Part shown: positions 15,103 through 29,853 of the stretch, piece after piece
Position numbering within the stretch: position 1 is the stretch's first letter
How the letters are laid out: the number at the start of each line of letters is the position of its first letter
IMG/VR virus record: IMGVR_UViG_3300024308_000018
Coordinates: 62,001 to 126,000 of that record
DNA length: 64,000 nt
Strand: one strand, 5' to 3'
Made by a program: the position numbers and the translations under genes
Notes under the pieces: model-generated
What the model was told of the DNA's origin: nothing
The model's input: only the letters and a program-made list of their open reading frames with translations
The model's database searches: none

Positions 15103-16200
15103 ATGCGCGGTATGAATGGTAGCTTTGGTTCCGGTGGCGACTTCGTGGAGAAGGGTGCCGAGTACAGATCGCACATAGACGTTCTGATTGACGATGCACT
15201 TGATCATTCGGAAATCACGTCGCACAACAAGAAAACCAAAATGAGCGCGTCCATGTTTCCCATGTGTAGTATCCTGCTGTTCACTCAGCTGCTGCACCAA
15301 GAAAACAGCGGGCGCTTCTGGCGCAAGACCAACATCCTGCTTGAAGTGTTCGCAGGGTCTGGTATCGCGATGCACGAGAAAATCCAATACGCTCTTGGTT
15401 TCTCTGGGCGACAGTTCGGTCATTACCACTGTAAGGACTATCGCTGCAAGGAAGGGTACATCGACACCAAAGGCTTCCGCCCCAAGGTCGACAACCCGAG
15501 ACTACACACGTTCACGACAGACAACATCTGTCCGCATTGCGGGCGGGGAATGGCATACGTCGAAATCGCGATTGAGCGCGACGACATCGTTATGTATTTG
15601 GATTCGGTGCTGGTCAGTGGGGAAGGGGACGACGCGACCGCCGAAGTTCTCGACCTTAAATCATGCACATCACGCGCCGCGTATGCTGCAACCAATCCAA
15701 AAGAGCTAACCAAACACAACAACATCGCACAGATACGCGCATACGCCGTCGAGTTCGAGAAGACGTTCAAGGTTCGAGTCACGCACTACGGGCTGGCCTA
15801 CGTCCCGCGCGACAACCCCAAGGGGTTCAAAGTCTACCGCAAAGAATTCGACGACCGCGAAGCATCTCTGGCGCTGAAGAACTACAAGAACGAGCGACGC
15901 AAATGGAAAGTTGCGAATCGCGCCGCCAAAGAAGTTGACCCGCTTTATTCTATCGAGGGCCGTCTTTGCACTTCGTCTTCTGACCACGACAAGTTGCACA
16001 AGTACGACCCATGCCCGTTGTCAGGAGTGTGTTTTTCTCAGTTGCAGCTCCATCGGGTGCTACGCGACTTTGTAGTGCTAAGTGCGAAGCATAAGGACAA
16101 GGATTACTTCACCGTTCTGGAAATGGCGACTGCTCCCAAGAAGTCCAAAGAGCTGCTGTTCAAATCGGAGAAGCCTAAAGCAAGGCACACCTCAATATGA
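15103..16200 (+). CDS. Cas4-like PD-(D/E)XK exonuclease
   Basis: PMC...G..MHE...LDSV...VLDLKS...QIRAY...C..CP...C (one N-terminal plus three C-terminal Cys) and an inserted CxxxxC/CPHC ribbon. Confidence 0.7.
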   Translation: MRGMNGSFGSGGDFVEKGAEYRSHIDVLIDDALDHSEITSHNKKTKMSASMFPMCSILLFTQLLHQENSGRFWRKTNILLEVFAGSGIAMHEKIQYALGFSGRQFGHYHCKDYRCKEGYIDTKGFRPKVDNPRLHTFTTDNICPHCGRGMAYVEIAIERDDIVMYLDSVLVSGEGDDATAEVLDLKSCTSRAAYAATNPKELTKHNNIAQIRAYAVEFEKTFKVRVTHYGLAYVPRDNPKGFKVYRKEFDDREASLALKNYKNERRKWKVANRAAKEVDPLYSIEGRLCTSSSDHDKLHKYDPCPLSGVCFSQLQLHRVLRDFVVLSAKHKDKDYFTVLEMATAPKKSKELLFKSEKPKARHTSI

Positions 16201-18185: not shown

Positions 18186-19070
18186 ATGTTTGAACCAAGC
18201 CGTCGCATTCTGCACGTAGTCGTAAACCCCTCGTCTCAAGACCCCAACGGGCCGGAACTGCGCCGCGTTATTGACGCCCTGCAACGCCGTATCGAGAACG
18301 ACGGCGGTTGCGGCATTCACCAGCCAGTCGAGCTGATCTCCACCGACACGCAATTCGACTGGGATACAGACATCCACAACGTTGTCGTGTTCGACCACGA
18401 TGGCGTTACCCCAGTCGGTGCCGCGCAAGCTGCTCCCGTCGAGTACATGGTGACTGACGCTGATGGTGAATACGTCTCCAAGTTCTTCACCCTGCTGCAC
18501 ACTCTGTACGTGTTGCCTGAGTGCCGCCGCCAAGGCATTGGCCGTATGCTGATGAACGCGCTTACTGCATGCACGGAAGGTTCAAGCCACATGGAGATCG
18601 ACGTTGCACCCAACAACGTGGTCGCCCGCAACTTCTACGCCAGTATCGGCTTCCGCGCCGAGAGCCTGAAGATGACGCGCACAGCGAACAGCGTAGTGCC
18701 TGCGGATTCCAGCGAACTCGACGCCGAGTGCGAAGATATTGCGCCGCCCGTGTTCACTTTCGGTACGCCGACTGACGCCGAGCTGATCGCCATGCACGCC
18801 GCACACCTGCGAGAAGTGCCGCACTCCGTAATCGAGATCATCCGTCCCGATCACGCCAAGGGCTACACCTCATTCTGCGCCCGTGTCGATGGCGAGCTGG
18901 CCGCCGTGATCCAGACCATTGCCACTGCGGGCCATGAGCGCGAGTTGCGCCGCATCTACGCGCTGCCCGAGTACCGCAAGTTGGGCATTGAGTCCAAGCT
19001 GTGCAGCTTCTTCAACGTGTCGCCGACGCTGCTGGCCCTGTCCATGCTGTGTCCGGAACTGCCTGCATGA
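18186..19070 (+). CDS. GNAT acetyltransferase (tandem GNAT domains)
   Basis: LYVLPECRRQGIGRMLM...NVVARNFYASIGF; second domain IYALPEYRKLGIESKL. Confidence 0.8.
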   Translation: MFEPSRRILHVVVNPSSQDPNGPELRRVIDALQRRIENDGGCGIHQPVELISTDTQFDWDTDIHNVVVFDHDGVTPVGAAQAAPVEYMVTDADGEYVSKFFTLLHTLYVLPECRRQGIGRMLMNALTACTEGSSHMEIDVAPNNVVARNFYASIGFRAESLKMTRTANSVVPADSSELDAECEDIAPPVFTFGTPTDAELIAMHAAHLREVPHSVIEIIRPDHAKGYTSFCARVDGELAAVIQTIATAGHERELRRIYALPEYRKLGIESKLCSFFNVSPTLLALSMLCPELPA

Positions 19071-21396: not shown

Positions 21397-21481
21397 TAGG
21401 TAACCAAAGTGGGGCCATTGTGCCCCACTTTCAGCAATGGATCCTCTGGACAAAACAATGGCTGAGATAGAGGTTAGTACG

Positions 21482-23839
21482 ATGGCTGAATCCAAGAAAG
21501 CAGCGGCTAAGAAAGGCAAAGCCGCTGCTCCGAAAAAGAGCAAGGCTGCTGAAGGCGTTGAGCAGGAGGTTGGTGGCAAAGTAGGCCGCTTTGATCTCAA
21601 CGCTGTAATGGCTGACTCGCTGCAAGAGATCGAGAAGAAGACTGGCCTGAGCAGCAACGGTTTTGGCCGTCACTGTCAGCGCTTGTCTACTGGACTTGTA
21701 GCGCTCGACATGTATCTCGACGGTGGCCTGATACCGGGCGGCTGGTACACCACGGCGGGCCCCGAGCAATCTGCGAAATCAACGTTGACCATGACGCTGG
21801 TTGCCGCGTGCATCAAGCAGAAATTCAACGGCGTGGGCGCACTGTTCGACTACGAAGGTTCGAGCGACGAAGACTACATCGTCAACATGATGAAGAACTT
21901 CGGCATCACCAACGCTGACCGCTCCAAGATCTTCGGCGTGCAGGATCCGGAGACGGGCAAGTACATCGTCAATGGCGTGTTCCGTTACTACGACCCGACC
22001 AACGGCGAGGCATTCTTCCAGTACATGCAAATGCTGCGTCGCCGACTGCCGGACAAAACGGTAACGGAGAAGGGTGAAGCGTACTACGTGTTCGAACACA
22101 CGGTGAAGAACAAGAAGATGCTCGCGGGCCAGTACGACATGGATTTCCTGCGCGTGCAAAACCTGCTGCGTGTTCCCGCTGCCGATACCAGTATGCAGTC
22201 ATTGACCGTAGTCGACTCGTATCCGGCAATGCTCCCCGACCAGCAGGACGACGATGATCCGAGCGGCGCAATGGCGTTGCAGGCGCGGATGTTCTCTGAC
22301 GGCATCAAGCGCTTCCGTGGTGGCATGCGTCGTAAGATGATGACCATCTTGGGCGTTAACCAACTGCGTGAGCGTCCGGCCCAGCAACATGGCGACCCCA
22401 ACTACGAGCCTTGCGGTAACGCGTTGAAGTTCTACTGCGTTCACCCCAATACCATCGTTGACTACCTCGACGAAGACGGCAACCCGGCCAAGTGCACTGC
22501 GCACGAATACCTCGAACGTTACGGCAACGAAGAAGCTGACATGCGCCCGCCGATCCGTGTACCGAGCGAGCAAGGTTGGGCGGTGCCGACCGAAGTGTTC
22601 GAGACCGATGGCGGCAAGTACGCGGATCGCGAAACCTTCATTGTCCGCACTCCGCGCAAAGTTCTGCGTGGCTCTGCGGGCCACAGCATTCTGACCGCTA
22701 CCAAGGTCAAGGTGCCGCACCCGTACAGCGACAACATGAACGGCTGGTCGGAAGACCTAGTTCTGCCGTCCGGTATTCCGGCGTTCAACGCTGCGGATGA
22801 CGAAGAAGACGAAGACGGTTTGTTCGGTGACTGGAACGAAATCAGTGCGCCGCGTGTTGGGTGGAGTCGACTGCAAAACATTCGCTATCGCGACAACGAC
22901 GTGTGGGCGTTCACCGATACCGAAGGGCTCGACACGTTCCACATCAACAGCATGTGGAGCAAGTTCATCAAGGAAGTCACGCCTGAGTTCCACAAGCTGT
23001 TTGCGCGCTGGACTGAGCACGAAGATTCGATCACCGAGCGCCTTGCGGCATTCAACGGTCTGGACTCGCAGTGGCTCATGCAGAATGCTGGCATTACAGC
23101 AGCAGCCTACGACGTTGCGTTCCAGCAATTCGCGTACATCGAAGAGCTGGTCAACGTGTACCTCAACTTCAGCGACGACAACCAGTGCGTGCCGGAACGC
23201 ATCACTGAGATTGCGCCTGCTGAGACCGAGATGCAGACCAAGCGCTACATCGACTTCAGCGTTGGCGGCAGCTGGTACAGCTCCGGCATCATCAGCCACA
23301 ACAGTGACGTGCGGATCCGGGTCATGCCGCGTGCCGTTCCCGACGCGTTCAAGAACTGCAACCCGCAACGTGGCGTGATCGAAGAGCCTAGCGTCGAGTT
23401 CGGTGGCAAGCGCGTCGACCGTTACAAGTTCATCAGCGGTCGCACCATCAAGAACAAACTTGGTGGCATCCCGAACCAAGAGTTCTGGGCGCGCATCTGG
23501 GAAGCGGACGGCAAGGGTAACGCGCGTGGTTTCGACCCCGTGTATGACTCTTATTTCTACTTGAAGCAGATCGGCCTGCTGGTTGGTCAGCGCAACAAGA
23601 TGAAGTTCCTTGATCCGGTTCCGTTGTCTGGTGCACGTCGCGCTATCACGTGGCAGGAACTGAAGGTGCTGATCGTAGGCAAGACCGAAGACCTGAAAGA
23701 GCTGTGCGCGGATCTCGGCATCAAGCCGTTCAACCTCCGCACGTGGTGCTTCAAGTATTGCAAGTCTGTCGAAGGCCGTCAGCGTTGCCGTGACTCCATC
23801 GTGGAGAAACAGCAAGCCGCTGCCACTGACGACGAGTAA
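21482..23839 (+). CDS. recA: RecA/UvsX-like recombinase containing an intein
   Basis: LSTGLVALD, Walker A GPEQSAKST, VVDS, NQLR, GNALKFY|intein|SDVRIR, KNK. An alternative start exists at 21437. Confidence 0.9.
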   Translation: MAESKKAAAKKGKAAAPKKSKAAEGVEQEVGGKVGRFDLNAVMADSLQEIEKKTGLSSNGFGRHCQRLSTGLVALDMYLDGGLIPGGWYTTAGPEQSAKSTLTMTLVAACIKQKFNGVGALFDYEGSSDEDYIVNMMKNFGITNADRSKIFGVQDPETGKYIVNGVFRYYDPTNGEAFFQYMQMLRRRLPDKTVTEKGEAYYVFEHTVKNKKMLAGQYDMDFLRVQNLLRVPAADTSMQSLTVVDSYPAMLPDQQDDDDPSGAMALQARMFSDGIKRFRGGMRRKMMTILGVNQLRERPAQQHGDPNYEPCGNALKFYCVHPNTIVDYLDEDGNPAKCTAHEYLERYGNEEADMRPPIRVPSEQGWAVPTEVFETDGGKYADRETFIVRTPRKVLRGSAGHSILTATKVKVPHPYSDNMNGWSEDLVLPSGIPAFNAADDEEDEDGLFGDWNEISAPRVGWSRLQNIRYRDNDVWAFTDTEGLDTFHINSMWSKFIKEVTPEFHKLFARWTEHEDSITERLAAFNGLDSQWLMQNAGITAAAYDVAFQQFAYIEELVNVYLNFSDDNQCVPERITEIAPAETEMQTKRYIDFSVGGSWYSSGIISHNSDVRIRVMPRAVPDAFKNCNPQRGVIEEPSVEFGGKRVDRYKFISGRTIKNKLGGIPNQEFWARIWEADGKGNARGFDPVYDSYFYLKQIGLLVGQRNKMKFLDPVPLSGARRAITWQELKVLIVGKTEDLKELCADLGIKPFNLRTWCFKYCKSVEGRQRCRDSIVEKQQAAATDDE
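22436..23302 (+). mobile_element. intein (289 aa) in RecA
   Basis: Begins CVHPNT, block B GHSIL, ends IISHN followed by Ser; no LAGLIDADG motif seen. Confidence 0.85.
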
Positions 23840-23901: not shown

Positions 23902-24399
23902 ATGAAGAAAATCCGCTACATTGAAATCCCGCACCACGACAAAGGTAACGGTCTGCGGTACGGCAAGACAGCTCTCGAAATGATCAACGCTGTACGAACA
24001 GAGCTTCACGCGCTCGACGTTGATTTGTGGAAGCAGTACGGCCACGATGTTGAGGGCATAGGCCCCTCGTTGTACGCGTCGTTGGCTGACGTGTGGAATC
24101 CGCCGCGTTGTCGCGCGACCTTGATGTTGGTGGACGGTGAGCCAGCAGCGTTCGTAATGAACCAGCGGCCGACGCCGACTTTCGTGTCGTTCTGGCATTT
24201 CATTGTAGCGCAACCGTTCCGACGTAACGGGTACGGCAAGCTGCTGATGCAGCACAGTATTGAAATGCACCGCAAACTTGGCTTCACCGAGATGTCCCTC
24301 AACGTGCACGCCAACAACCCTCACGCGTTTGCCATGTATCACGCTGCTGGATTTGAGCCGAAGATGGTAACGATGTCACTCAAACTGCAAGGAACTTGA
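23902..24399 (+). CDS. GNAT acetyltransferase
   Basis: FIVAQPFRRNGYGKLLM...NPHAFAMYHAAGF. Confidence 0.85.
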   Translation: MKKIRYIEIPHHDKGNGLRYGKTALEMINAVRTELHALDVDLWKQYGHDVEGIGPSLYASLADVWNPPRCRATLMLVDGEPAAFVMNQRPTPTFVSFWHFIVAQPFRRNGYGKLLMQHSIEMHRKLGFTEMSLNVHANNPHAFAMYHAAGFEPKMVTMSLKLQGT

Positions 24400-24401
24400 A
24401 T

Positions 24402-24983
24402 ATGACTGAAGAGAACAAAGTAACTGAGAACGAAGAGCTGCCCGAAGTTCACGAAGGTGGTGAGGCCATTGATCTGTGGCGCGTTCCTAAGTCCCCCGAA
24501 GCACGCAGCGAGGTTGAGGTAGAGCTGCCGTTTATTGCGCCGCGCGTTGAAGATGGTTACCCGGTCAATGCGGGCGGTGCCAGCGTCAGTCACTTCAAGA
24601 TCCGGCTGATGGCGATGCAGCATTACGTGCGCTGCTGCGCTGAGCGGCTGGGTGACTCCAGCCCCGTCAAGTTGTTCAAGGACGTACCGGACAACAATCA
24701 CGGATTCGGTAGCTTCATCGTTGCGCACCTCGACGATAGCCAGTGCGTCTACAGCGTGGAGTACGTAAGCTGCGACGCAATCAACGGCATGCAGACTCGC
24801 GTGATCGTCCCGAGCCGTTCGCCGCTTGCTGTTAGCGCGGAGTGGGGCGACGTCGCCCTCAAGTACGAAGACCTTAGCCAACTGCAACGTTGGGGACAAA
24901 CGATCCTCGATCATCGTTGGATGCGTCACTACAAAAACACTGAGCTGTTCGACCTGCTGGCTAATGTGCCGCCGCAACGTTGA
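24402..24983 (+). CDS. hypothetical protein
   Basis: AAGGA RBS; terminator hairpin follows. Confidence 0.65.
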   Translation: MTEENKVTENEELPEVHEGGEAIDLWRVPKSPEARSEVEVELPFIAPRVEDGYPVNAGGASVSHFKIRLMAMQHYVRCCAERLGDSSPVKLFKDVPDNNHGFGSFIVAHLDDSQCVYSVEYVSCDAINGMQTRVIVPSRSPLAVSAEWGDVALKYEDLSQLQRWGQTILDHRWMRHYKNTELFDLLANVPPQR

Positions 24984-25023
24984 TCTCTGGGGCTGCCGCA
25001 TGGCAGCCCTTTTTCGTCTCCGT

Positions 25024-25118
25024 GACGAAAACCGGACTAGCCTCTGGGAGGCCCATTTGATACACTGTTTGCACGGTGAGGGAATGGCCCGCACCACATC
25101 CCAAAGAGGAATCAAACA
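25024..25118 (+). promoter_or_regulatory. conserved promoter plus leader element, copy 1
   Basis: GACGAAAACCGGACTAG-N~16-TTTGATACACT, then GGTGAGGG..CCC.CACC hairpin and CCCAAAGAGGA RBS. Confidence 0.8.
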
Positions 25119-25424
25119 ATGTTCGCACTCACTGAAAGCCAGATCGACTCCCTGCAATCTTTCGCTGCTGGCCTGCTCTCTGTTACCGACATCGCGCTGC
25201 GCCTGAAAGCCGACGACATCCACATTGTTGCGCTGACCGACAACCTCGATGCCGACATGCTGTACCTTCTGCAATCCGGTGAGAAGGAAGCCGTGCACGT
25301 TCCTTGCGTCGGCAAGGGCAGCGGGCAGTACGTGATGCAACTCAACCGCAGCACGCCAGCAGGTGACGACTTCGAAGCGCTTGTCGTGACCGTCAGCTAC
25401 TTACCCTCCACGATCCGCGCGTAA
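25119..25424 (+). CDS. hypothetical protein
   Basis: First gene after the conserved leader. Confidence 0.7.
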   Translation: MFALTESQIDSLQSFAAGLLSVTDIALRLKADDIHIVALTDNLDADMLYLLQSGEKEAVHVPCVGKGSGQYVMQLNRSTPAGDDFEALVVTVSYLPSTIRA

Positions 25425-25469
25425 CAAATGAGGGGCTGGGAAACTGGCCCCTATATAAGGAAGCGAACC

Positions 25470-25781
25470 ATGCAACGCCTTACCGAAAAACAGAAGAACG
25501 TGATCCAGTTGTTCAACGCCAGCGAGATAAGCGTAACGGAATTCGTGCAACGTCTGGCCGAGGACGGCATCGTTGTGGAAGAGCTGTGCCCCACACCCAC
25601 CGACGCGCAAGATGCAATGATCGCGTATGGGGTCAAAGAGTGCATTCGTCTCCCTAGAATTCGCGGCGCTGATTACGGGTCGCATGCCGCGCTGCAAGTT
25701 ATCGTGCTCAAGCACGTAGTGAAGACGCCGCGCAAAACAGTCAACCAGACCTACGTCGTGGAAATCAAAGGAGGCCAATGA
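25470..25781 (+). CDS. hypothetical protein (paralog of 27761-28036)
   Basis: ISVTEFVQRLAEDGIVVEEL vs IVTATEFIQRMYEHNIVVQSI. Confidence 0.6.
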   Translation: MQRLTEKQKNVIQLFNASEISVTEFVQRLAEDGIVVEELCPTPTDAQDAMIAYGVKECIRLPRIRGADYGSHAALQVIVLKHVVKTPRKTVNQTYVVEIKGGQ

Positions 25782-25987
25782 TGCGCACCACGTTATCTAA
25801 AGAGCGCCAAGCAATGTTGCTTACTCTTCTCAGCAAGATGTCGCCGGAAGATCAGCTGTTCGTGCACGACAAACTGCACAGCAAGATCGATACCGTCAGG
25901 GAGCAGGCCGCTATCCGCGCTCGCAAACATGGCGCACAGCGTCGCCGGGTGATGTCACGCATCCCTACCGATCCTGTGCAGTCATGA
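25778..25987 (+). CDS. hypothetical protein
   Basis: ATGA-coupled, GGAGG RBS. Confidence 0.55.
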   Translation: MMRTTLSKERQAMLLTLLSKMSPEDQLFVHDKLHSKIDTVREQAAIRARKHGAQRRRVMSRIPTDPVQS

Positions 25988-26298
25988 GCTGCGACCACAT
26001 CGTCGGCAGCGTTGGGGCCACATACTGCACGGCGGAAATGTGGCCCCGCTACGTCAGCGAGTTCGAAGCCGCCGTCGAGTTCTTCAACACAACGCGACTC
26101 GCTGTTCCACATCCGGGCTTCTGTGAACGTCACGCATTCTGTTTCAAGTGCGGCGAGCGCATTGACCCCAAAGTGTTCAATCAACCGATTCCAAAATTCC
26201 AAGGCGTGCCGCAAATCTACGCGCGGTTCGCAAAGTTCAATGAGAGGGTGAAGAATGTCAAACTGGAAAGTAAGCGAAAAAGGCGAGCCGTCCGATAA
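25984..26298 (+). CDS. Zn-finger-like hypothetical protein
   Basis: CDH...FCFKCGERI pattern. Confidence 0.55.
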   Translation: MSCDHIVGSVGATYCTAEMWPRYVSEFEAAVEFFNTTRLAVPHPGFCERHAFCFKCGERIDPKVFNQPIPKFQGVPQIYARFAKFNERVKNVKLESKRKRRAVR

Positions 26299-26821
26299 GT
26301 GGGAACTGTCCGTCATTGATATGGATGCGGAGGACGCCGCGCAGCTGGCACGCAGCTACGCATGGCAAGGCCCGCACAAGATCATCGTGTGGTCGAGTGC
26401 AGGATCCGCAGACTACAAAGCGCTGCCCGCACTTGCGCTGTTGTTGCGTCAATCTGCGCACGACTACGCAACGGAATTGAACACGGCGGCGCAACGTACT
26501 GGTCAGACTGACGGCGCAGCGCTCGACATGTACTCACTGCGCATTAAGTTGAATCGTGTGCTGGCCGAAGGGGTTTACTTCAAGGGCGAAGTGATACCCG
26601 CAGACCTTCCTGTGAATTCTGACACACTGCAAGAGTTCTGGGACAGTGTGCGGGGAGTAGGTAACTCGGTGCTCGACTCGCTAGATGTGGTTGACCTGAT
26701 GCTGGCAATAGAGGAAGAGTTCAACGTACCGATCCGCGAGAAGGAGATCGCGGCAGTAATTCAGGATCCGAAGTACGCTGACGTGGAAGATGTTCTGCGC
26801 TGGCTTGCAACCAAACCCTAA
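26255..26821 (+). CDS. protein with C-terminal acyl carrier protein-like domain
   Basis: LDSLDVVDLMLAIEEEFNVPI phosphopantetheine-site motif. Confidence 0.75.
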   Translation: MSNWKVSEKGEPSDKWELSVIDMDAEDAAQLARSYAWQGPHKIIVWSSAGSADYKALPALALLLRQSAHDYATELNTAAQRTGQTDGAALDMYSLRIKLNRVLAEGVYFKGEVIPADLPVNSDTLQEFWDSVRGVGNSVLDSLDVVDLMLAIEEEFNVPIREKEIAAVIQDPKYADVEDVLRWLATKP

Positions 26822-27168
26822 TGATGGAGAGCATGACAATGGGCAAACCTACTGCACGTGAAATCAGTGAACTGCGCAGCAAGATGATCAACGCTGCCAA
26901 TGACGGCTTCTTTCAATTCTGCGCCGAAGAGCTGGGCGGCAGCGAGAAGATTACGGAAGCGAATCTGCAAGCTGCATGGGACATCGTTCGCGATGAAGAT
27001 AACTCGAACTTTGACTCGCTGGATCGCATCGAGTTCTTGATGGCGGTCGAAGACGAGTTCAACTGTGACATCGACGAGCAAAGCCTGCTCGACGCAATGC
27101 GCAGTGACGAGTACAAAGACGTCAACGCCATTCTGGTGTGGATCGATAGTCGCACCAACAGCTGGTAA
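26821..27168 (+). CDS. acyl carrier protein-like
   Basis: FDSLDRIEFLMAVEDEFNCDI. Confidence 0.75.
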   Translation: MMESMTMGKPTAREISELRSKMINAANDGFFQFCAEELGGSEKITEANLQAAWDIVRDEDNSNFDSLDRIEFLMAVEDEFNCDIDEQSLLDAMRSDEYKDVNAILVWIDSRTNSW

Positions 27169-27179
27169 GAGGTAGTGCC

Positions 27180-27497
27180 ATGAACGCACAAGAGATCCGA
27201 AGTGCTTTGTTTGCAGAGTTCAACAACTACGGCGACATGCTGAAACGTCTCGGTCTCTCGCCTCCTATTTACGCGCCACAAGATTTAGCCGTCGCGTGGC
27301 GTGCCCTTATAGAAGGCAACGAGTTTGACGAGATGGACTTCGACCGGATCATGATGCACGTGCAGGAAGCAAACGCATGGCACATACCGACCAAAGTTAT
27401 CAGCGCGTTGTCTGGCGGCGGCCCCTTCATTGACGTAGAGGCGGCCATCCACCAGATTGAAATCCACATCATTTCAACCGGACTATCAGAGGACTGA
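27180..27497 (+). CDS. hypothetical protein, possibly degenerate ACP-like
   Basis: FDEMDFDRIMMHVQE sits at the equivalent position but lacks the Ser. Confidence 0.45.
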   Translation: MNAQEIRSALFAEFNNYGDMLKRLGLSPPIYAPQDLAVAWRALIEGNEFDEMDFDRIMMHVQEANAWHIPTKVISALSGGGPFIDVEAAIHQIEIHIISTGLSED

Positions 27498-27498
27498 C

Positions 27499-27750
27499 AT
27501 GGTAAGCAAAGAGCGTGCACGTAGCGCCATCTATAAAGCGCTGAGAGAAGAGTTCAACCTGACAGTCACTTGCGACGCTGACGCGTGGCGTGCTGTCCGC
27601 GATATTGACTCACGCGATCTCATGGATCTGGTGATGGAGATTGAATACGATCTCGACGCCAGCATTGACACCGACCAACTTGGGGCCGACTTCCTCGACG
27701 GGGAAGATACTGAAGTGGCTCTCGACCTGCTGGTCAAATCACTCTACTGA
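27499..27750 (+). CDS. acyl carrier protein-like
   Basis: IDSRDLMDLVMEIEYDLDASI; 83 aa, acidic. Confidence 0.7.
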   Translation: MVSKERARSAIYKALREEFNLTVTCDADAWRAVRDIDSRDLMDLVMEIEYDLDASIDTDQLGADFLDGEDTEVALDLLVKSLY

Positions 27751-27760
27751 AGAGGTTTGT

Positions 27761-28036
27761 ATGCGAGTAACTGAAGCAACCGAAGCCGTGCAGCTTATTG
27801 ACCTGCTGCGCCACCGCATCGTAACCGCGACTGAATTTATTCAGCGCATGTATGAGCACAACATCGTTGTGCAATCAATCCGGCCCGCGCGGGATGCTGA
27901 CGTAACGACAAACGAGTTTGTGCGTCAGGCTTTGGTGTGCGGCCCGTCTCTCGGTCTCACGCTGGAAGTCGTGGTCGCCGACGAACAATGCCGCATCGCT
28001 CCCGAAACTTGCACGCGCATGATCATCGTTATCTAA
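27761..28036 (+). CDS. hypothetical protein (paralog of 25470-25781)
   Basis: GAGG RBS; shared TEF.QR motif. Confidence 0.6.
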   Translation: MRVTEATEAVQLIDLLRHRIVTATEFIQRMYEHNIVVQSIRPARDADVTTNEFVRQALVCGPSLGLTLEVVVADEQCRIAPETCTRMIIVI

Positions 28037-28050
28037 CAAGGAATAGAACC

Positions 28051-28827
28051 ATGTACGAAATCAAAAACTATGAGGCAGTTGTCGACCAAGCAAACGCAAT
28101 GGTCGAGCAGATCGATCCGGCTAACGGTCTGGTGCAACGCGTCACGTTCGTGATGACTGTCCCGCAGGCAGTGACCCGCTTCCCCGCCAACCTCGCCACA
28201 TTCCAAGAGCGTGTCGGTGAGCAGCTGTCGTGGATCTACAACATTGCAGGCGCGAAAGCCAAACTGGTTCGACGCTTTGCAAGCAAGAGCATGCTGTTCC
28301 GTTCGAGCGGCACGCTCTCGCCGTCTCACCTTCTGACCTCCGAATATGAGGTCGAATTCAGCAACCCTGAATTCATGATGGCGTGGACTCCGGACGCACG
28401 TCGAGCACTGTTGGCGTTTTCGCGTGCGCTGTATTCCCTCCGCGCGGACTACAGCGGAAACGAAGATTACAACGCGCTGGCGAATCTGGTTCACAGCATG
28501 CTGAATGCTTCACTGGCCCCGTGGTTTGTTTGCGACGGCTGCGCAGAAGAGCATGAGTACAAGCGCATCATTGCAGAGCACAGCAAGAACCGCAGCAACG
28601 CCGTGATCCAAAGTATCCTGCAACGCGTCAGCAATATGTCAGCCGCCGCATTCTTCAACACTGACATCGGTGGCGACCTCGTTGCTGAAGACGGCGCGCC
28701 GATTCGCGCGTGGGTGCTGGATCGTGTGCGTTACGAAGAGCTGCTGTTCACGACCTTCACACATCGTTGCATTGGTGTGAAGGGTACACCTATCAAAGAA
28801 GCCGTCGCTGATGGCGCGGAGATCTAA
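28051..28827 (+). CDS. hypothetical protein
   Basis: AAGGA RBS, 258 aa. Confidence 0.65.
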   Translation: MYEIKNYEAVVDQANAMVEQIDPANGLVQRVTFVMTVPQAVTRFPANLATFQERVGEQLSWIYNIAGAKAKLVRRFASKSMLFRSSGTLSPSHLLTSEYEVEFSNPEFMMAWTPDARRALLAFSRALYSLRADYSGNEDYNALANLVHSMLNASLAPWFVCDGCAEEHEYKRIIAEHSKNRSNAVIQSILQRVSNMSAAAFFNTDIGGDLVAEDGAPIRAWVLDRVRYEELLFTTFTHRCIGVKGTPIKEAVADGAEI

Positions 28828-28836
28828 GGGGCAGCT

Positions 28837-29853
28837 ATGTCGTCAATTAAATTGAGTCAAGCAATTCAGGCTGTATTCGGTGCTGTCGTCTCACTGGGGC
28901 GCACCAGCACCGAAACCATGCAACGCCCGAGCGCTGAGACCGTGGGCAAATACCTGTCGATGGATCCTGAGAGTGCCCAGCGCGCTCTCAACAAAAAGCG
29001 CTCCGGCGTGTGGGAGATTCCCGTGTCGTTCGACGGCGTGGAAACTCCAGACGTGGAATGGGCACTGCACCTGATGGCAATGATGCTGAGCACGCGTCTT
29101 GATTGTGCATCCAACGTTGTGCGTCGTTCGTCTTCCGCCGCTGGCCTGTCCAAAGCAACGGTCGCCAGCAGAAATGGACGCGTGCACTTTACGGTGCTCA
29201 CCGAACGCCCGATCTGCGCTATCGCGTTTTCGTTCCCGCGTAACGCGCTGCATTTCACGGCGCTGGTGTCTGCCGCTGAAGTGTTCGCACTTCTGGAAGA
29301 CTGCGCGCAATACCATGCACGTGAAGATAACGATGTGATCCGGCCGCTGACGAAATTCATCCTTCGCCACGCTGCATCGTTGCGTGAGTGCCTGAAGCCT
29401 GAGAAGTGGTGCCTGTCACCTATCGACTACTCCACGATGTCCGCAGAGTTGGAGGTGCTGCGCAATCTTCCGGACGTTCAGCAAATGGTGTGGAACTTCC
29501 GTGGCGCTTTCCAGTACGCGCTACTCACGGGGCTGGTGAACAAGGACAAGCAATTCGACGCCAGCCCACAAGCCCAACGTGCTTACGCCAGTCAGTGGCC
29601 CGAGCTGACTCATACATGGATGGCTATGTGCGCATGTGAGCCGCTGGCTTTCCTGCACGCCGTGATCAATCTTCACGCGCCGATGTACGATGACCGCGAA
29701 GCCCCGAACAAAAATGTCCTGCAATTCCCCGACGTTCCGGCCCTACCCTCTACCGCATCCAGTTTCGACTACGCGGTAGAGCTGACGGCTGGCGGGCAGC
29801 TGGCGGCCCCAGTGACGAAAACCGGACTAGCAAGTAAGGGGCTCAATTGGTAA
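28837..29853 (+). CDS. hypothetical protein
   Basis: 338 aa; its 3' end overlaps promoter copy 2. Confidence 0.65.
   Translation: MSSIKLSQAIQAVFGAVVSLGRTSTETMQRPSAETVGKYLSMDPESAQRALNKKRSGVWEIPVSFDGVETPDVEWALHLMAMMLSTRLDCASNVVRRSSSAAGLSKATVASRNGRVHFTVLTERPICAIAFSFPRNALHFTALVSAAEVFALLEDCAQYHAREDNDVIRPLTKFILRHAASLRECLKPEKWCLSPIDYSTMSAELEVLRNLPDVQQMVWNFRGAFQYALLTGLVNKDKQFDASPQAQRAYASQWPELTHTWMAMCACEPLAFLHAVINLHAPMYDDREAPNKNVLQFPDVPALPSTASSFDYAVELTAGGQLAAPVTKTGLASKGLNW

What the first reader, a model, noticed from the sequence alone, without database searches (positions are those of the whole stretch)
26255..27750. Tandem cluster of three to four acyl-carrier-protein-like genes without any fatty-acid or PKS enzymes
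Seen: consecutive genes carry LDSLDVVDLMLAIEEEFNVPI (fused behind an unrelated ~115-aa domain), FDSLDRIEFLMAVEDEFNCDI, FDEMDFDRIMMHVQE (no Ser) and IDSRDLMDLVMEIEYDLDASI. No PPTase or synthase is visible in the window. Established: DSL is the phosphopantetheine attachment motif, and host AcpP is a hub partner of SpoT, MukB and lipid A enzymes. Inference: diversified ACP mimics or decoys expressed early to rewire lipid metabolism or to block ACP-dependent host or defence proteins.
Basis: partly seen in the sequence, partly recalled or inferred. Interest (0 to 1): 0.6.

Follow-up and report, generated by a model that had tools for sequence, protein, structure and literature searches.

The report
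Four tandem phage ACP-like genes
An uncultured 230-kb jumbo phage carries four adjacent, long-diverged genes for acyl-carrier-protein-like proteins; two have lost, or can lose, the cofactor-attachment serine and no carrier-dependent enzyme is found in the genome, so they more likely bind proteins than carry fatty acids.

Summary
Window 26255-27750 holds four co-oriented, tightly packed genes (A1-A4) that all belong to the carrier-protein (ACP) fold.

- **Family membership:** A1's C-terminal domain and A2 are clear paralogs. A4 hits only ACPs by its own profile. A3, the serine-less gene, joins the family by profile-profile comparison (94.9%).
- **Fold:** an AlphaFold model of A2 (pLDDT 82) superposes on whole ACPs (Z up to 7.1).
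- **Age and selection:** each paralog has orthologs in related metagenomic phages and is under purifying selection (dN/dS 0.07-0.41).
- **Attachment serine:** it is kept in every A2 and A4. It is Glu in every A3. It is lost in one A1 subclade whose ACP domain is still constrained.
- **A1 fusion:** A1's N-terminal ~85-aa domain is a separate neighbouring gene in more distant relatives.
- **Missing enzymes:** the genome has no PPTase, ketosynthase, adenylation, condensation, FabD, PlsC or LpxL homolog.
- **Copy number:** it ranges from one to four among relatives.

My best reading (about 0.4) is that these are ACP-fold protein-binding modules acting through the acidic helix II on ACP-client proteins, with A2 and A4 probably modified by host AcpS. 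Early expression, targets and any lipid effect are untested. I rate it a new variant of a known kind.

The parts
26255..26821 (+). A1: 188-aa fusion protein. Residues 1-88 form a conserved alpha/beta domain of unknown function. Residues 89-187 form an ACP-like domain with the DSLD motif in this phage.
   Evidence: ORF. The C-domain matches A2 at E 1e-13. PHROG 5934 'ACP' E 3.5e-5. In the AF2 model the N-domain has pLDDT 80-92 and the C-domain 41-63. Orthologs at 55-77% identity appear. Asp-Ser is replaced (LAEID / LAVID) in the L005/L009/L010/L011 subclade, where the C-domain still has dN/dS 0.13-0.18.
26839..27168 (+). A2: 109-aa ACP-like protein (115 aa if the TAATG-overlapping ATG at 26821 is used). 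The DSLD motif is strictly conserved.
   Evidence: Pfam PP-binding 19.4 bits (cutoff 20.8) and PP-binding_2. PHROG 5934 E 2.7e-8. AF2 pLDDT 82. VIA-align Z up to 7.1 to ACPs. Orthologs at 71-84% identity start at the equivalent of 26839. A GGAGAG site lies 7 nt upstream.
27180..27497 (+). A3: 105-aa strongly diverged, Ser-less member of the family (FDEMD, with Glu in place of Ser).
   Evidence: No Pfam or PHROG hit. It is the best non-training hit of the family HMM among 1441 genome ORFs, E 0.048. hhalign of A3 orthologs against the family: 94.9%, E 4.4e-8, 93 columns. Orthologs P0009, L012 and L016 all carry Glu. dN/dS 0.09-0.21.
27499..27750 (+). A4: compact 83-aa ACP-like protein. Asp-Ser is conserved (DSRD here, DSLD in relatives).
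   Evidence: Family HMM 67.7 bits. Its own profile hits only ACPs in the PDB, E 7.6e-4, covering AcpP residues 8-72. Orthologs start at MVSKE, which is the ATG at 27499. dN/dS 0.11-0.22.
24989..25010 (+). Intrinsic-terminator-like hairpin (9-bp stem, 7 G-C pairs, T-run) after the preceding gene. It marks the probable 5' boundary of the transcription unit that contains A1-A4.
25119..26298 (+). Upstream genes of the same unit: N1 (25119-25424), N2 (25428-25781), N0 (25778-25987) and Nz (25984-26298). All are small proteins of unknown function that are syntenic with the ACP-like genes in relatives.
27761..28036 (+). N3: 91-aa third member of the N1/N2 paralog family, directly downstream of A4.
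   Evidence: N2 against N3 E 1.5e-4. Family alignment. 93% identical ortholog in L005.
23902..24399 (+). GNAT acetyltransferase (165 aa). It is always found at the head of the syntenic module, but it lies upstream of the terminator.
   Evidence: Pfam PF00583 E 2.9e-13. It is syntenic in L005-L012, L014 and L019.

Best explanation
A1-A4 are four old paralogs of a rare, phage-restricted branch of the acyl-carrier-protein fold. I think they work as protein-binding modules rather than as carriers of a phage biosynthetic pathway.

Shown:
- They have the ACP fold and ACP homology.
- The residues conserved across the family all lie on helix II, the surface through which AcpP docks on its client enzymes. 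The Asp of DSL-D is invariant. The Asp before Ser, a Met, a Glu and an Ile are nearly invariant. These correspond to AcpP D38, D35, M44, E47 and I54.
- All four proteins are very acidic (pI 4.0-4.6).
- A3 always has Glu for the attachment Ser.
- One A1 subclade lost Asp-Ser, yet its ACP domain stays under purifying selection.
- A1's ACP domain is fused to an ~85-aa domain that is a separate adjacent gene in distant relatives (a Rosetta-stone link).
- The genome encodes no PPTase and no carrier-dependent enzyme.

Inferred:
- The proteins dock through helix II on proteins that normally bind ACP. Candidates are host AcpS, type II FAS, PlsB or lipid A acyltransferases, SpoT and MukB. They may also dock on the A1 N-domain partner. 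Either way they would compete with or divert host AcpP during takeover.
- A2 and A4 never lose the Ser, so they are probably phosphopantetheinylated by host AcpS and act in holo form.
- A3 and the Ser-less A1 cannot be modified and would act as pseudo-ACPs.

Which host protein is hit, and when the genes are expressed, is unknown.
For: - **Fold and homology:**
- **Helix II conservation:**, read against the AcpP alignment printed.
- **Acidity:**
- **Serine pattern:**
- **Purifying selection, including the Ser-less domains:**
- **Fusion and fission of the N-domain:**. A stand-alone homolog exists in Klebsiella phage N1M2, and BFVD holds small-protein look-alikes.
- **No PPTase, KS, AMP-binding, PlsC, FabD, condensation or LpxL homolog in 230 kb:**
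- **Accessory behaviour:** relatives carry one to four copies through deletions and insertions, which is typical of host-interface loci.
- **Rarity:** only 33 representatives at E<=1e-3 among 1.84 billion, about ten of them true family members.
Against: - No host target is identified and no interaction is shown.
- Ser is strictly conserved in A2 and A4 across every relative, although the position tolerates Glu or Val in the paralogs. This points to real phosphopantetheinylation and fits a genuine carrier role at least as well.
- Many neighbouring genes (g195, N family, Nz, g263, g338) have no detectable family. Any of them could be a novel enzyme.
- Timing of expression is unknown.
- The A1 C-domain model is of low confidence.
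- The Foldseek E-values for A2 are not significant on their own.
Confidence: 0.4

Rival explanations
1. They are genuine carrier proteins of a phage-directed pathway. Host AcpS converts A2 and A4 (and A1 in Ser-bearing phages) to the holo form. An unrecognised phage enzyme among the syntenic neighbours (the GNAT, g195, g263, g338 or the N family), or a host enzyme, then loads an acyl or aminoacyl group that is transferred to a phage or host macromolecule. A3 and the Ser-less A1 would be degenerate regulatory or scaffolding subunits of that system.
For: Asp-Ser-Leu/Ile/Val-Asp is invariant in all A2-like, A4-like and single-copy members, including distant ones such as P0022, P0023, P0027 and P0029. 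Paralogs show that the position can be substituted. A GNAT acyltransferase heads the syntenic module in every relative down to 56% identity. Most neighbours are unannotated and could hide enzymes.
Against: The genome has no PPTase, KS, AT, adenylation, condensation, PlsC or LpxL-type enzyme. The GNAT is separated from the ACP-like genes by another gene and a strong terminator. Close relatives delete A2-A4, and even g263 and g338, while keeping A1, so no fixed enzyme-carrier set is maintained. Two of the four paralog types cannot carry a cofactor yet are constrained.
Confidence: 0.3
2. They are structural or regulatory adaptor subunits for phage proteins. The ACP fold would be reused purely as a small acidic binding module, much as mitochondrial ACP is a structural subunit of complex I and of LYR-protein complexes. 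The partners would be phage-encoded: the A1 N-domain family, the basic neighbours N0, Nz and N2, or replication and recombination proteins encoded upstream. Host ACP clients would not be involved.
For: The Rosetta-stone fusion and fission of the N-domain with an ACP-like gene. Alternation of very acidic (A1-A4, N1) and basic (N0 pI 11.2, Nz 9.6, N2 9.2) small proteins in one operon. Co-occurrence of the N family with ACP-like genes even in distant contigs L017, L019 and L021.
Against: The conserved residues are exactly those of the canonical ACP recognition helix, and Ser is retained in A2 and A4. A purely phage-internal adaptor would not need either. No interaction was tested, and neighbourhood alone is weak evidence.
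Confidence: 0.2
3. They are degenerating duplicate genes or chance motif matches with no present function.
For: Copy number varies. A2 is reduced to a 45-aa stub in L013/L014. Pfam scores are below threshold.
Against: dN/dS is 0.07-0.41 for all four genes over dS up to about 2. Each paralog forms its own clade with members from several phages. Profile and fold evidence is consistent. The frames are intact and preceded by ribosome-binding sites.
Confidence: 0.03

Closest known systems
Bacterial type II FAS acyl carrier protein (E. coli AcpP; Pfam PF00550 PP-binding)
   Same: The helical-bundle fold is the same: the A2 model superposes on whole ACPs with Z 6-7 and rmsd 2.4-2.9 A. The D-S-L-D ... 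E ... M ... E-E-F ... I helix II signature is shared. The charge is acidic. A4 aligns to nearly the full length of AcpP.
   Different: - Scores fall below the Pfam gathering threshold.
- A1c, A2 and A3 carry a longer helix I and an extra helix with a conserved L-Q-x-A-W motif before helix II, plus a conserved C-terminal Y-x-D-V-x(3)-L-x-W.
- A3, and A1 in one subclade, lack the Ser.
- A1 is fused to another domain.
- There is no FAS, PKS or NRPS context and no PPTase.
[quoted passage not shown]
   Same: These are also phage-encoded ACP homologs without a pathway and of unknown function. ACPs are described as rarely found in phages (PMC7760394), as having unclear function (PMC5463345), and as duplicated within a multigene island (PMC13573597). 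A2 matches PHROG 5934 at E 2.7e-8.
   Different: - The PHROG match covers only about 31 residues of helix II.
- tblastn of A2 against 50,697 phage records finds nothing.
- There are four paralogs here rather than one or two, they include Ser-less members, and one is a domain fusion.
- The family is confined to a small clade of uncultured jumbo phages distantly related to Alexandravirus.
Mitochondrial ACP (NDUFAB1/ACPM) as a structural subunit of complex I and LYR-protein complexes
   Same: This is a precedent for the ACP fold serving as a protein-binding module outside fatty-acid synthesis. These chains are among the structural matches.
   Different: Mitochondrial ACP keeps the Ser, and its acyl-phosphopantetheine arm inserts into the LYR partner. 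That point is established knowledge recalled from memory, not tested here. No LYR-like partner is identified in this phage.
Toxicity of apo-ACP in E. coli (recalled from memory: excess unmodified ACP inhibits glycerol-3-phosphate acyltransferase)
   Same: It shows that an ACP lacking the prosthetic group can act as an inhibitor of a host ACP-client enzyme. That is the mechanism proposed here for A3 and the Ser-less A1.
   Different: It is an overexpression artefact of the host's own ACP, not a viral protein. It is a lead from memory, not tested or found in the paper searches here.

Membership tests
Carrier-protein superfamily (ACP / PP-binding, PF00550) | Helical-bundle ACP fold | tested here: met
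   The A2 AF2 model has pLDDT 82 and pTM 0.74. By VIA-align all 50 top chains are carrier proteins, with Z up to 7.1 and rmsd 2.4-2.9 A over 76-80 of about 80 residues. A1c was modelled only at low confidence.
Carrier-protein superfamily (ACP / PP-binding, PF00550) | Score at or above Pfam's gathering threshold | tested here: not met
   A1 scores 17.5 bits and A2 19.4 bits against the 20.8 cutoff. A3 and A4 get no hit. Custom family profiles nevertheless hit only ACPs in the PDB (E 1e-5, E 7.6e-4).
Carrier-protein superfamily (ACP / PP-binding, PF00550) | Conserved Ser at the N-terminus of helix II (the D-S-L motif) for 4'-phosphopantetheine attachment | tested here: inconclusive
   Met in A2 and A4 and all their orthologs, and in A1 of this phage. 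Not met in A3 (Glu in 4 of 4 orthologs) or in A1 of the L005/L009/L010/L011 subclade (AE / AV).
Carrier-protein superfamily (ACP / PP-binding, PF00550) | Actual phosphopantetheinylation by a PPTase | not testable with these tools
   No PPTase (PF01648) is found in the phage genome. The host AcpS docking prediction gave no verdict.
Carrier-protein superfamily (ACP / PP-binding, PF00550) | Cognate partner enzymes (KS, AT, A, C or acyltransferase) encoded with it | tested here: not met
   PF00109, PF00501, PF01553, PF00698, PF00668 and PF03279 all give no match in the 229,746-bp genome, while the control genomes gave matches. Only GNATs are present.
PHROG 5934 / 4154 'acyl carrier protein' (phage ACPs) | Significant full-length match to the PHROG profile | tested here: inconclusive
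   A2 has E 2.7e-8 and A1 E 3.5e-5 to phrog_5934, but only over profile positions 41-74 of 93. A3 and A4 have no ACP PHROG hit.
Known anti-defence or defence proteins (PADLOC-DB) | Match to any PADLOC model | tested here: not met
   A1-A4, N1-N3, Nz and g263 give no hit at E<=0.1.

The most novel reading that the evidence does not exclude
A jumbo phage deploys a set of pseudo- and holo-ACPs as viral mimics of the host's acyl carrier protein. A Ser-less member (A3) and a fusion member (A1, tethered to a dedicated small phage domain) would block or redirect ACP-client hubs of the host, such as lipid synthesis, SpoT or MukBEF. A2 and A4 would hijack host AcpS. This would be the first described case of viral ACP mimicry and the first functional class of 'pseudo-carrier' proteins.
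Probability: 0.3. Interest if true: 0.75.

Novelty: new variant of a known kind. Interest (0 to 1): 0.5.

Why it matters
Phage ACP homologs have been noted for years with 'function unclear' (PMC5463345, PMC7760394, PMC13573597). This locus offers a natural experiment. Within one operon there are paralogs that keep the cofactor serine, paralogs that have replaced it yet stay under selection, and a fusion that names a likely partner domain. That makes the question 'carrier or mimic?' directly testable with four small soluble proteins. If they prove to be mimics, they would reveal a new host-takeover route through the ACP interaction hub. They would also give tools for probing AcpP-dependent processes such as lipid synthesis, the stringent response and chromosome condensation.

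Tried and rejected
- **Complex prediction of A2 with three copies of E. coli AcpS.** The score was 0.52, but a control with AcpS replaced by an unrelated protein scored 0.55. There is no verdict, and the job is not used as evidence either way.
- **Foldseek of the whole A1 model against the PDB.** Nothing significant; only a local ACP match.
- **VIA-align wide search of the A1 model.** The best match to the N-domain is ZapA at Z 5.2, which is within noise.
- **ESM Atlas by features, by structure and by shape.** No usable lead for the N-domain.
- **megablast of the locus and tblastn of A2 against 50,697 phage records.** No match.
- **The search for related loci with A1 in IMG/VR.** Nothing. With A2 it gave only two marginal hits, L003 and L004 at E 2e-4 over 44 residues, which I did not follow up.
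- **BLAST of A3 against the genome's ORFs.** No paralog was detected; only profile methods link it to the family.
- **A4 against A3 by hhalign.** Not significant (6.8%). A3 is tied to the family through A1c and A2.
- **N-family profile against PDB sequences.** No hit.
- **Laying RNA-library contigs.** Pieces of relatives cover A2, A3, A4 and N3 in two wastewater metatranscriptomes. Contigs show neither strand nor level, and DNA carry-over cannot be excluded, so I do not count this as proof of expression.
- **Weak ORF hit considered and dropped.** The hit at genome 207704-208465 (DYDSTD motif, E 0.58) is not significant.
- **Order of the duplications.** The tree does not resolve whether A4 arose by in-phage duplication or by separate acquisition: its clade joins canonical ACPs on long branches.
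Full report
**Setting**

The window is bases 62001-126000 of a 229,746-bp IMG/VR virus record that CheckV rates as complete. GC content is about 56%. The 800-aa RecA/UvsX gene at 21437-23836 is 41-51% identical to those of Erwinia jumbo phages of the genus Alexandravirus and their relatives. Those phages share the SSB-UvsX synteny but have no counterpart of the genes studied here. Near-identical DNA occurs in subsurface and wastewater metagenomes from eight studies.

**The observation**

Four co-oriented ORFs lie at these positions:

| Gene | Coordinates | Length |
|---|---|---|
| A1 | 26255-26821 | 188 aa |
| A2 | 26821 or, more likely, 26839-27168 | 115 or 109 aa |
| A3 | 27180-27497 | 105 aa |
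| A4 | 27499-27750 | 83 aa |

- The genes are separated by -1 to 11 nt, and each has a Shine-Dalgarno-like site.
- Orthologs begin at the equivalents of 26839 and 27499.
- A strong terminator-like hairpin at 24989-25010 precedes the block N1-N2-N0-Nz-A1-A2-A3-A4-N3-g263-g338. The block therefore looks like one transcription unit.

**Are they ACP-like?**

- Curated libraries give only near-threshold answers. Pfam PP-binding scores 17.5 bits for A1 and 19.4 for A2 against a cutoff of 20.8, and A3 and A4 get nothing. PHROG 5934 'acyl carrier protein' gives E 3.5e-5 for A1 and 2.7e-8 for A2, but only over helix II.
- A1 residues 89-187 and A2 are clear paralogs: 31% identity over 100 residues, E 1e-13.
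- A profile of A1c, A2 and A4 orthologs finds only ACPs among 177,635 distinct PDB sequences, best E 1e-5.
- A profile of A4 orthologs alone also finds only ACPs (E 7.6e-4), aligned over AcpP residues 8-72.
- A3 has no BLAST similarity to anything in the genome. It is the best non-training hit of the family HMM among 1441 ORFs, at E 0.048. With its orthologs, including a 58%-identical one in L016 that carries the family's L-Q-x-A-W motif, hhalign links it to the family at 94.9% probability, E 4.4e-8, over 93 columns.
- An AlphaFold2 model of A2, built on a 31-row alignment, has pLDDT 82 and pTM 0.74.
- Foldseek ranks ACPs first, but at non-significant E-values.
- VIA-align gives Z up to 7.1 with rmsd 2.4-2.9 A over 76-80 of about 80 target residues, and all 50 listed chains are carrier proteins.

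All four genes therefore belong to the carrier-protein fold. The family differs from canonical ACP by a longer first helix, an extra helix carrying L-Q-x-A-W before helix II, and a C-terminal Y-x-D-V-x(3)-L-x-W. A4 is the compact form closest to canonical ACP.

**Real, old and constrained genes**

The word search and contig look-ups recovered related uncultured phages.

- Pairwise dN/dS against the window is 0.15-0.39 for A1, 0.07-0.41 for A2, 0.09-0.21 for A3 and 0.11-0.22 for A4, at dS up to about 2.
- In a maximum-likelihood tree each paralog forms its own clade with members from several phages: A1c 95/93, A2 core 98/98, A3 100/100, A4 96/90. The duplications therefore predate the divergence of these phages.
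- The branching among the groups, and relative to canonical ACPs, is unresolved. A4 could be a separate acquisition.

**Rarity**

An exhaustive profile search of 1.84 billion representatives gave only 33 proteins at E<=1e-3. About ten belong to this family, and the rest are ordinary ACPs and tandem-ACP proteins.

**The serine**

- A2-type and A4-type proteins, and the single-copy members of more distant contigs (P0022, P0023, P0027, P0029), always keep Asp-Ser.
- A3 has Glu at this position in all four orthologs.
- A1 keeps Asp-Ser in this phage, L006, L012, L013 and L016. It has Ala-Glu or Ala-Val in L005, L009, L010 and L011.
- Within that Ser-less subclade the ACP-like domain still evolves at dN/dS 0.13-0.18. 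Part of the family therefore functions without phosphopantetheine.
- The position tolerates substitution, so its invariance in A2 and A4 suggests that those two are modified.
- The columns conserved across the whole family all lie on helix II: the Asp after Ser-Leu is invariant, and the preceding Asp, a Met, a Glu and an Ile are nearly invariant. By the alignment printed they correspond to AcpP D38, D35, M44, E47 and I54, which is the surface used for partner recognition (established knowledge).
- All four proteins are strongly acidic, with pI 4.05-4.55.

**The A1 fusion**

- A1 residues 1-88 are the best conserved part of the protein. They are confidently modelled (pLDDT 80-92) as three strands, a short helix and a long helix.
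- No convincing solved fold or Atlas cluster matches them.
- In more distant relatives this domain is a separate gene. L019:3938-4189 (83 aa, 51% identical) sits 40 nt upstream of an ACP-like gene. L021:661-960 (99 aa) sits 1.6 kb from one.
- A homolog also stands alone in Klebsiella jumbo phage N1M2 (92 aa; 25.8 bits against my domain HMM), with no ACP nearby.
- BFVD holds six small viral proteins of 79-195 aa that match the A1 model at probability 1.00, the best with TM 0.86 and rmsd 1.8 A. The tool does not say which domain they match.
- The fusion and fission pattern is Rosetta-stone evidence that this domain and an ACP-like protein act together.

**Context and flux**

The module GNAT-g195-N1-N2-N0-(Nz)-A1-A2-(A3)-(A4)-N3-(g263)-g338 is syntenic down to 56% GNAT identity, but its content varies among relatives:

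| Contig(s) | ACP-like genes present | Other differences |
|---|---|---|
| L012 | A1, A2, A3, A4 | Same as the window |
| L010, L011 | A1, A2, A3, A4 | An extra N-family gene lies between A2 and A3 |
| L005 | A1, A2, A4 | Lacks A3 |
| L016 | A1, A2, A3 | Lacks A4 |
| L006-L008 | A1, A2 | Deleted from after A2 to the last 40 codons of g263 |
| L013, L014 | A1 only | A2 reduced to a 45-aa stub |
| L017, L021 | One ACP-like gene | Distant contigs |

The copy number is thus one to four, and A1 is the most persistent member.

- The whole genome has no match to ACPS (PPTase), ketoacyl synthase, AMP-binding, PlsC-type acyltransferase, FabD-type acyltransferase, condensation domain or lipid A acyltransferase. 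The same searches found these families in the control genomes.
- Only GNATs are present, at window 24094-24354 and 18345-19001.
- None of the neighbours has a Pfam, PHROG or PADLOC assignment.

**Interpretation**

- **Best reading (about 0.4).** These are ACP-fold protein-binding modules that use the conserved acidic helix II to dock on ACP-client proteins during host takeover. A2 and A4 are probably converted to the holo form by host AcpS. A3 and the Ser-less A1 act as pseudo-ACPs.
- **Main rival (about 0.3).** A2 and A4 are true carriers of an unrecognised pathway whose enzymes hide among the unannotated neighbours or belong to the host. The invariant Ser and the ever-present GNAT speak for this. 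The terminator between the GNAT and the cluster, the dispensability of A2-A4 in close relatives, and the absence of any known partner enzyme speak against it.
- **Third reading (about 0.2).** They are adaptors for phage proteins only.
- **Decay or chance** is excluded by the selection analysis.

RNA-library contigs covering parts of the locus cannot prove transcription.

**Literature**

- Phage ACP homologs are on record as rare and of unclear function (PMC7760394, PMC5463345).
- Duplicated ACPs inside a multigene island were recently noted in Flavobacterium jumbophages (PMC13573597).
- I found no paper assigning a mechanism to a phage ACP.
- Phages do attack one AcpP-dependent machine, MukBEF, by another route: a DNA mimic (PMC7617805).

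The new elements here are the four-member diversification, the Ser-less members under selection and the domain fusion. I therefore rate it a new variant of a known kind, with interest 0.5.

**Not done**

The single complex job, A2 with E. coli AcpS, returned no verdict.

Noticed in passing
window 25119-25424 (N1), 25428-25781 (N2), 27761-28036 (N3); L005:8335-8619, L017:3382-3672, L019:2778-3454, L021:362-652: A second paralog family of ~90-117-aa proteins flanks and interleaves the ACP-like genes. It co-occurs with them even in distant contigs, and in L005, L009, L010 and L011 a fourth copy sits between A2 and A3. It has no Pfam, PHROG or PDB relative.
   Followed up: partly
window 26255-26518 (A1 residues 1-88); L019:3938-4189; L021:661-960; L022:4956-5234 (Klebsiella phage N1M2 gp71): The A1 N-terminal domain (W-x-V-S-E-K-G-x-P ... 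H-K-I-I-V-W-S) is a recurrent small phage protein domain that occurs stand-alone in other jumbo phages. Its fold and function are unassigned.
   Followed up: partly
L005:1472-5008, compared with window 21437-23839: The RecA/UvsX ortholog in relative L005 is 1178 aa and has Hint and LAGLIDADG hits, which suggests an intein insertion. The window's copy is 800 aa and L010's is 781 aa.
   Followed up: no
window 25984-26298 (Nz): A 104-aa basic protein (pI 9.6) with conserved Cys/His spacing (C-x-R-H-x-F-C-F-K-C-G). It is 85-89% identical in relatives, which makes it far more conserved than its neighbours, and it overlaps the A1 start by 44 nt. It may be a zinc-binding regulator.
   Followed up: no
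window 18186-19070 and 23902-24399: Two GNAT acetyltransferase genes lie in the replication/recombination region. One is a 294-aa protein with two GNAT-profile stretches. The other heads the ACP-containing module in every relative.
   Followed up: partly
window 15103-16200: A 365-aa protein matches PHROG 1706 'CRISPR/Cas system associated' (Cas4-like nuclease). It is syntenic with the same annotation in Erwinia phage phB78.
   Followed up: no
L006:4436-4716; L013:1493-1630: Deletion scars appear in relatives. One is a 40-codon remnant of g263 after A2 in L006-L008. The other is a 45-aa N-terminal stub of A2 in L013/L014. In both cases the scar is followed by the same 132/133-aa gene, which suggests recurrent deletions that end at a common downstream point.
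   Followed up: partly
window 24900-28900: Contigs from two wastewater metatranscriptome runs (X19, X20), at 90-99% identity, cover parts of N2, Nz, A2, A3, A4 and N3. This hints at transcription, but DNA carry-over is not excluded.
   Followed up: partly
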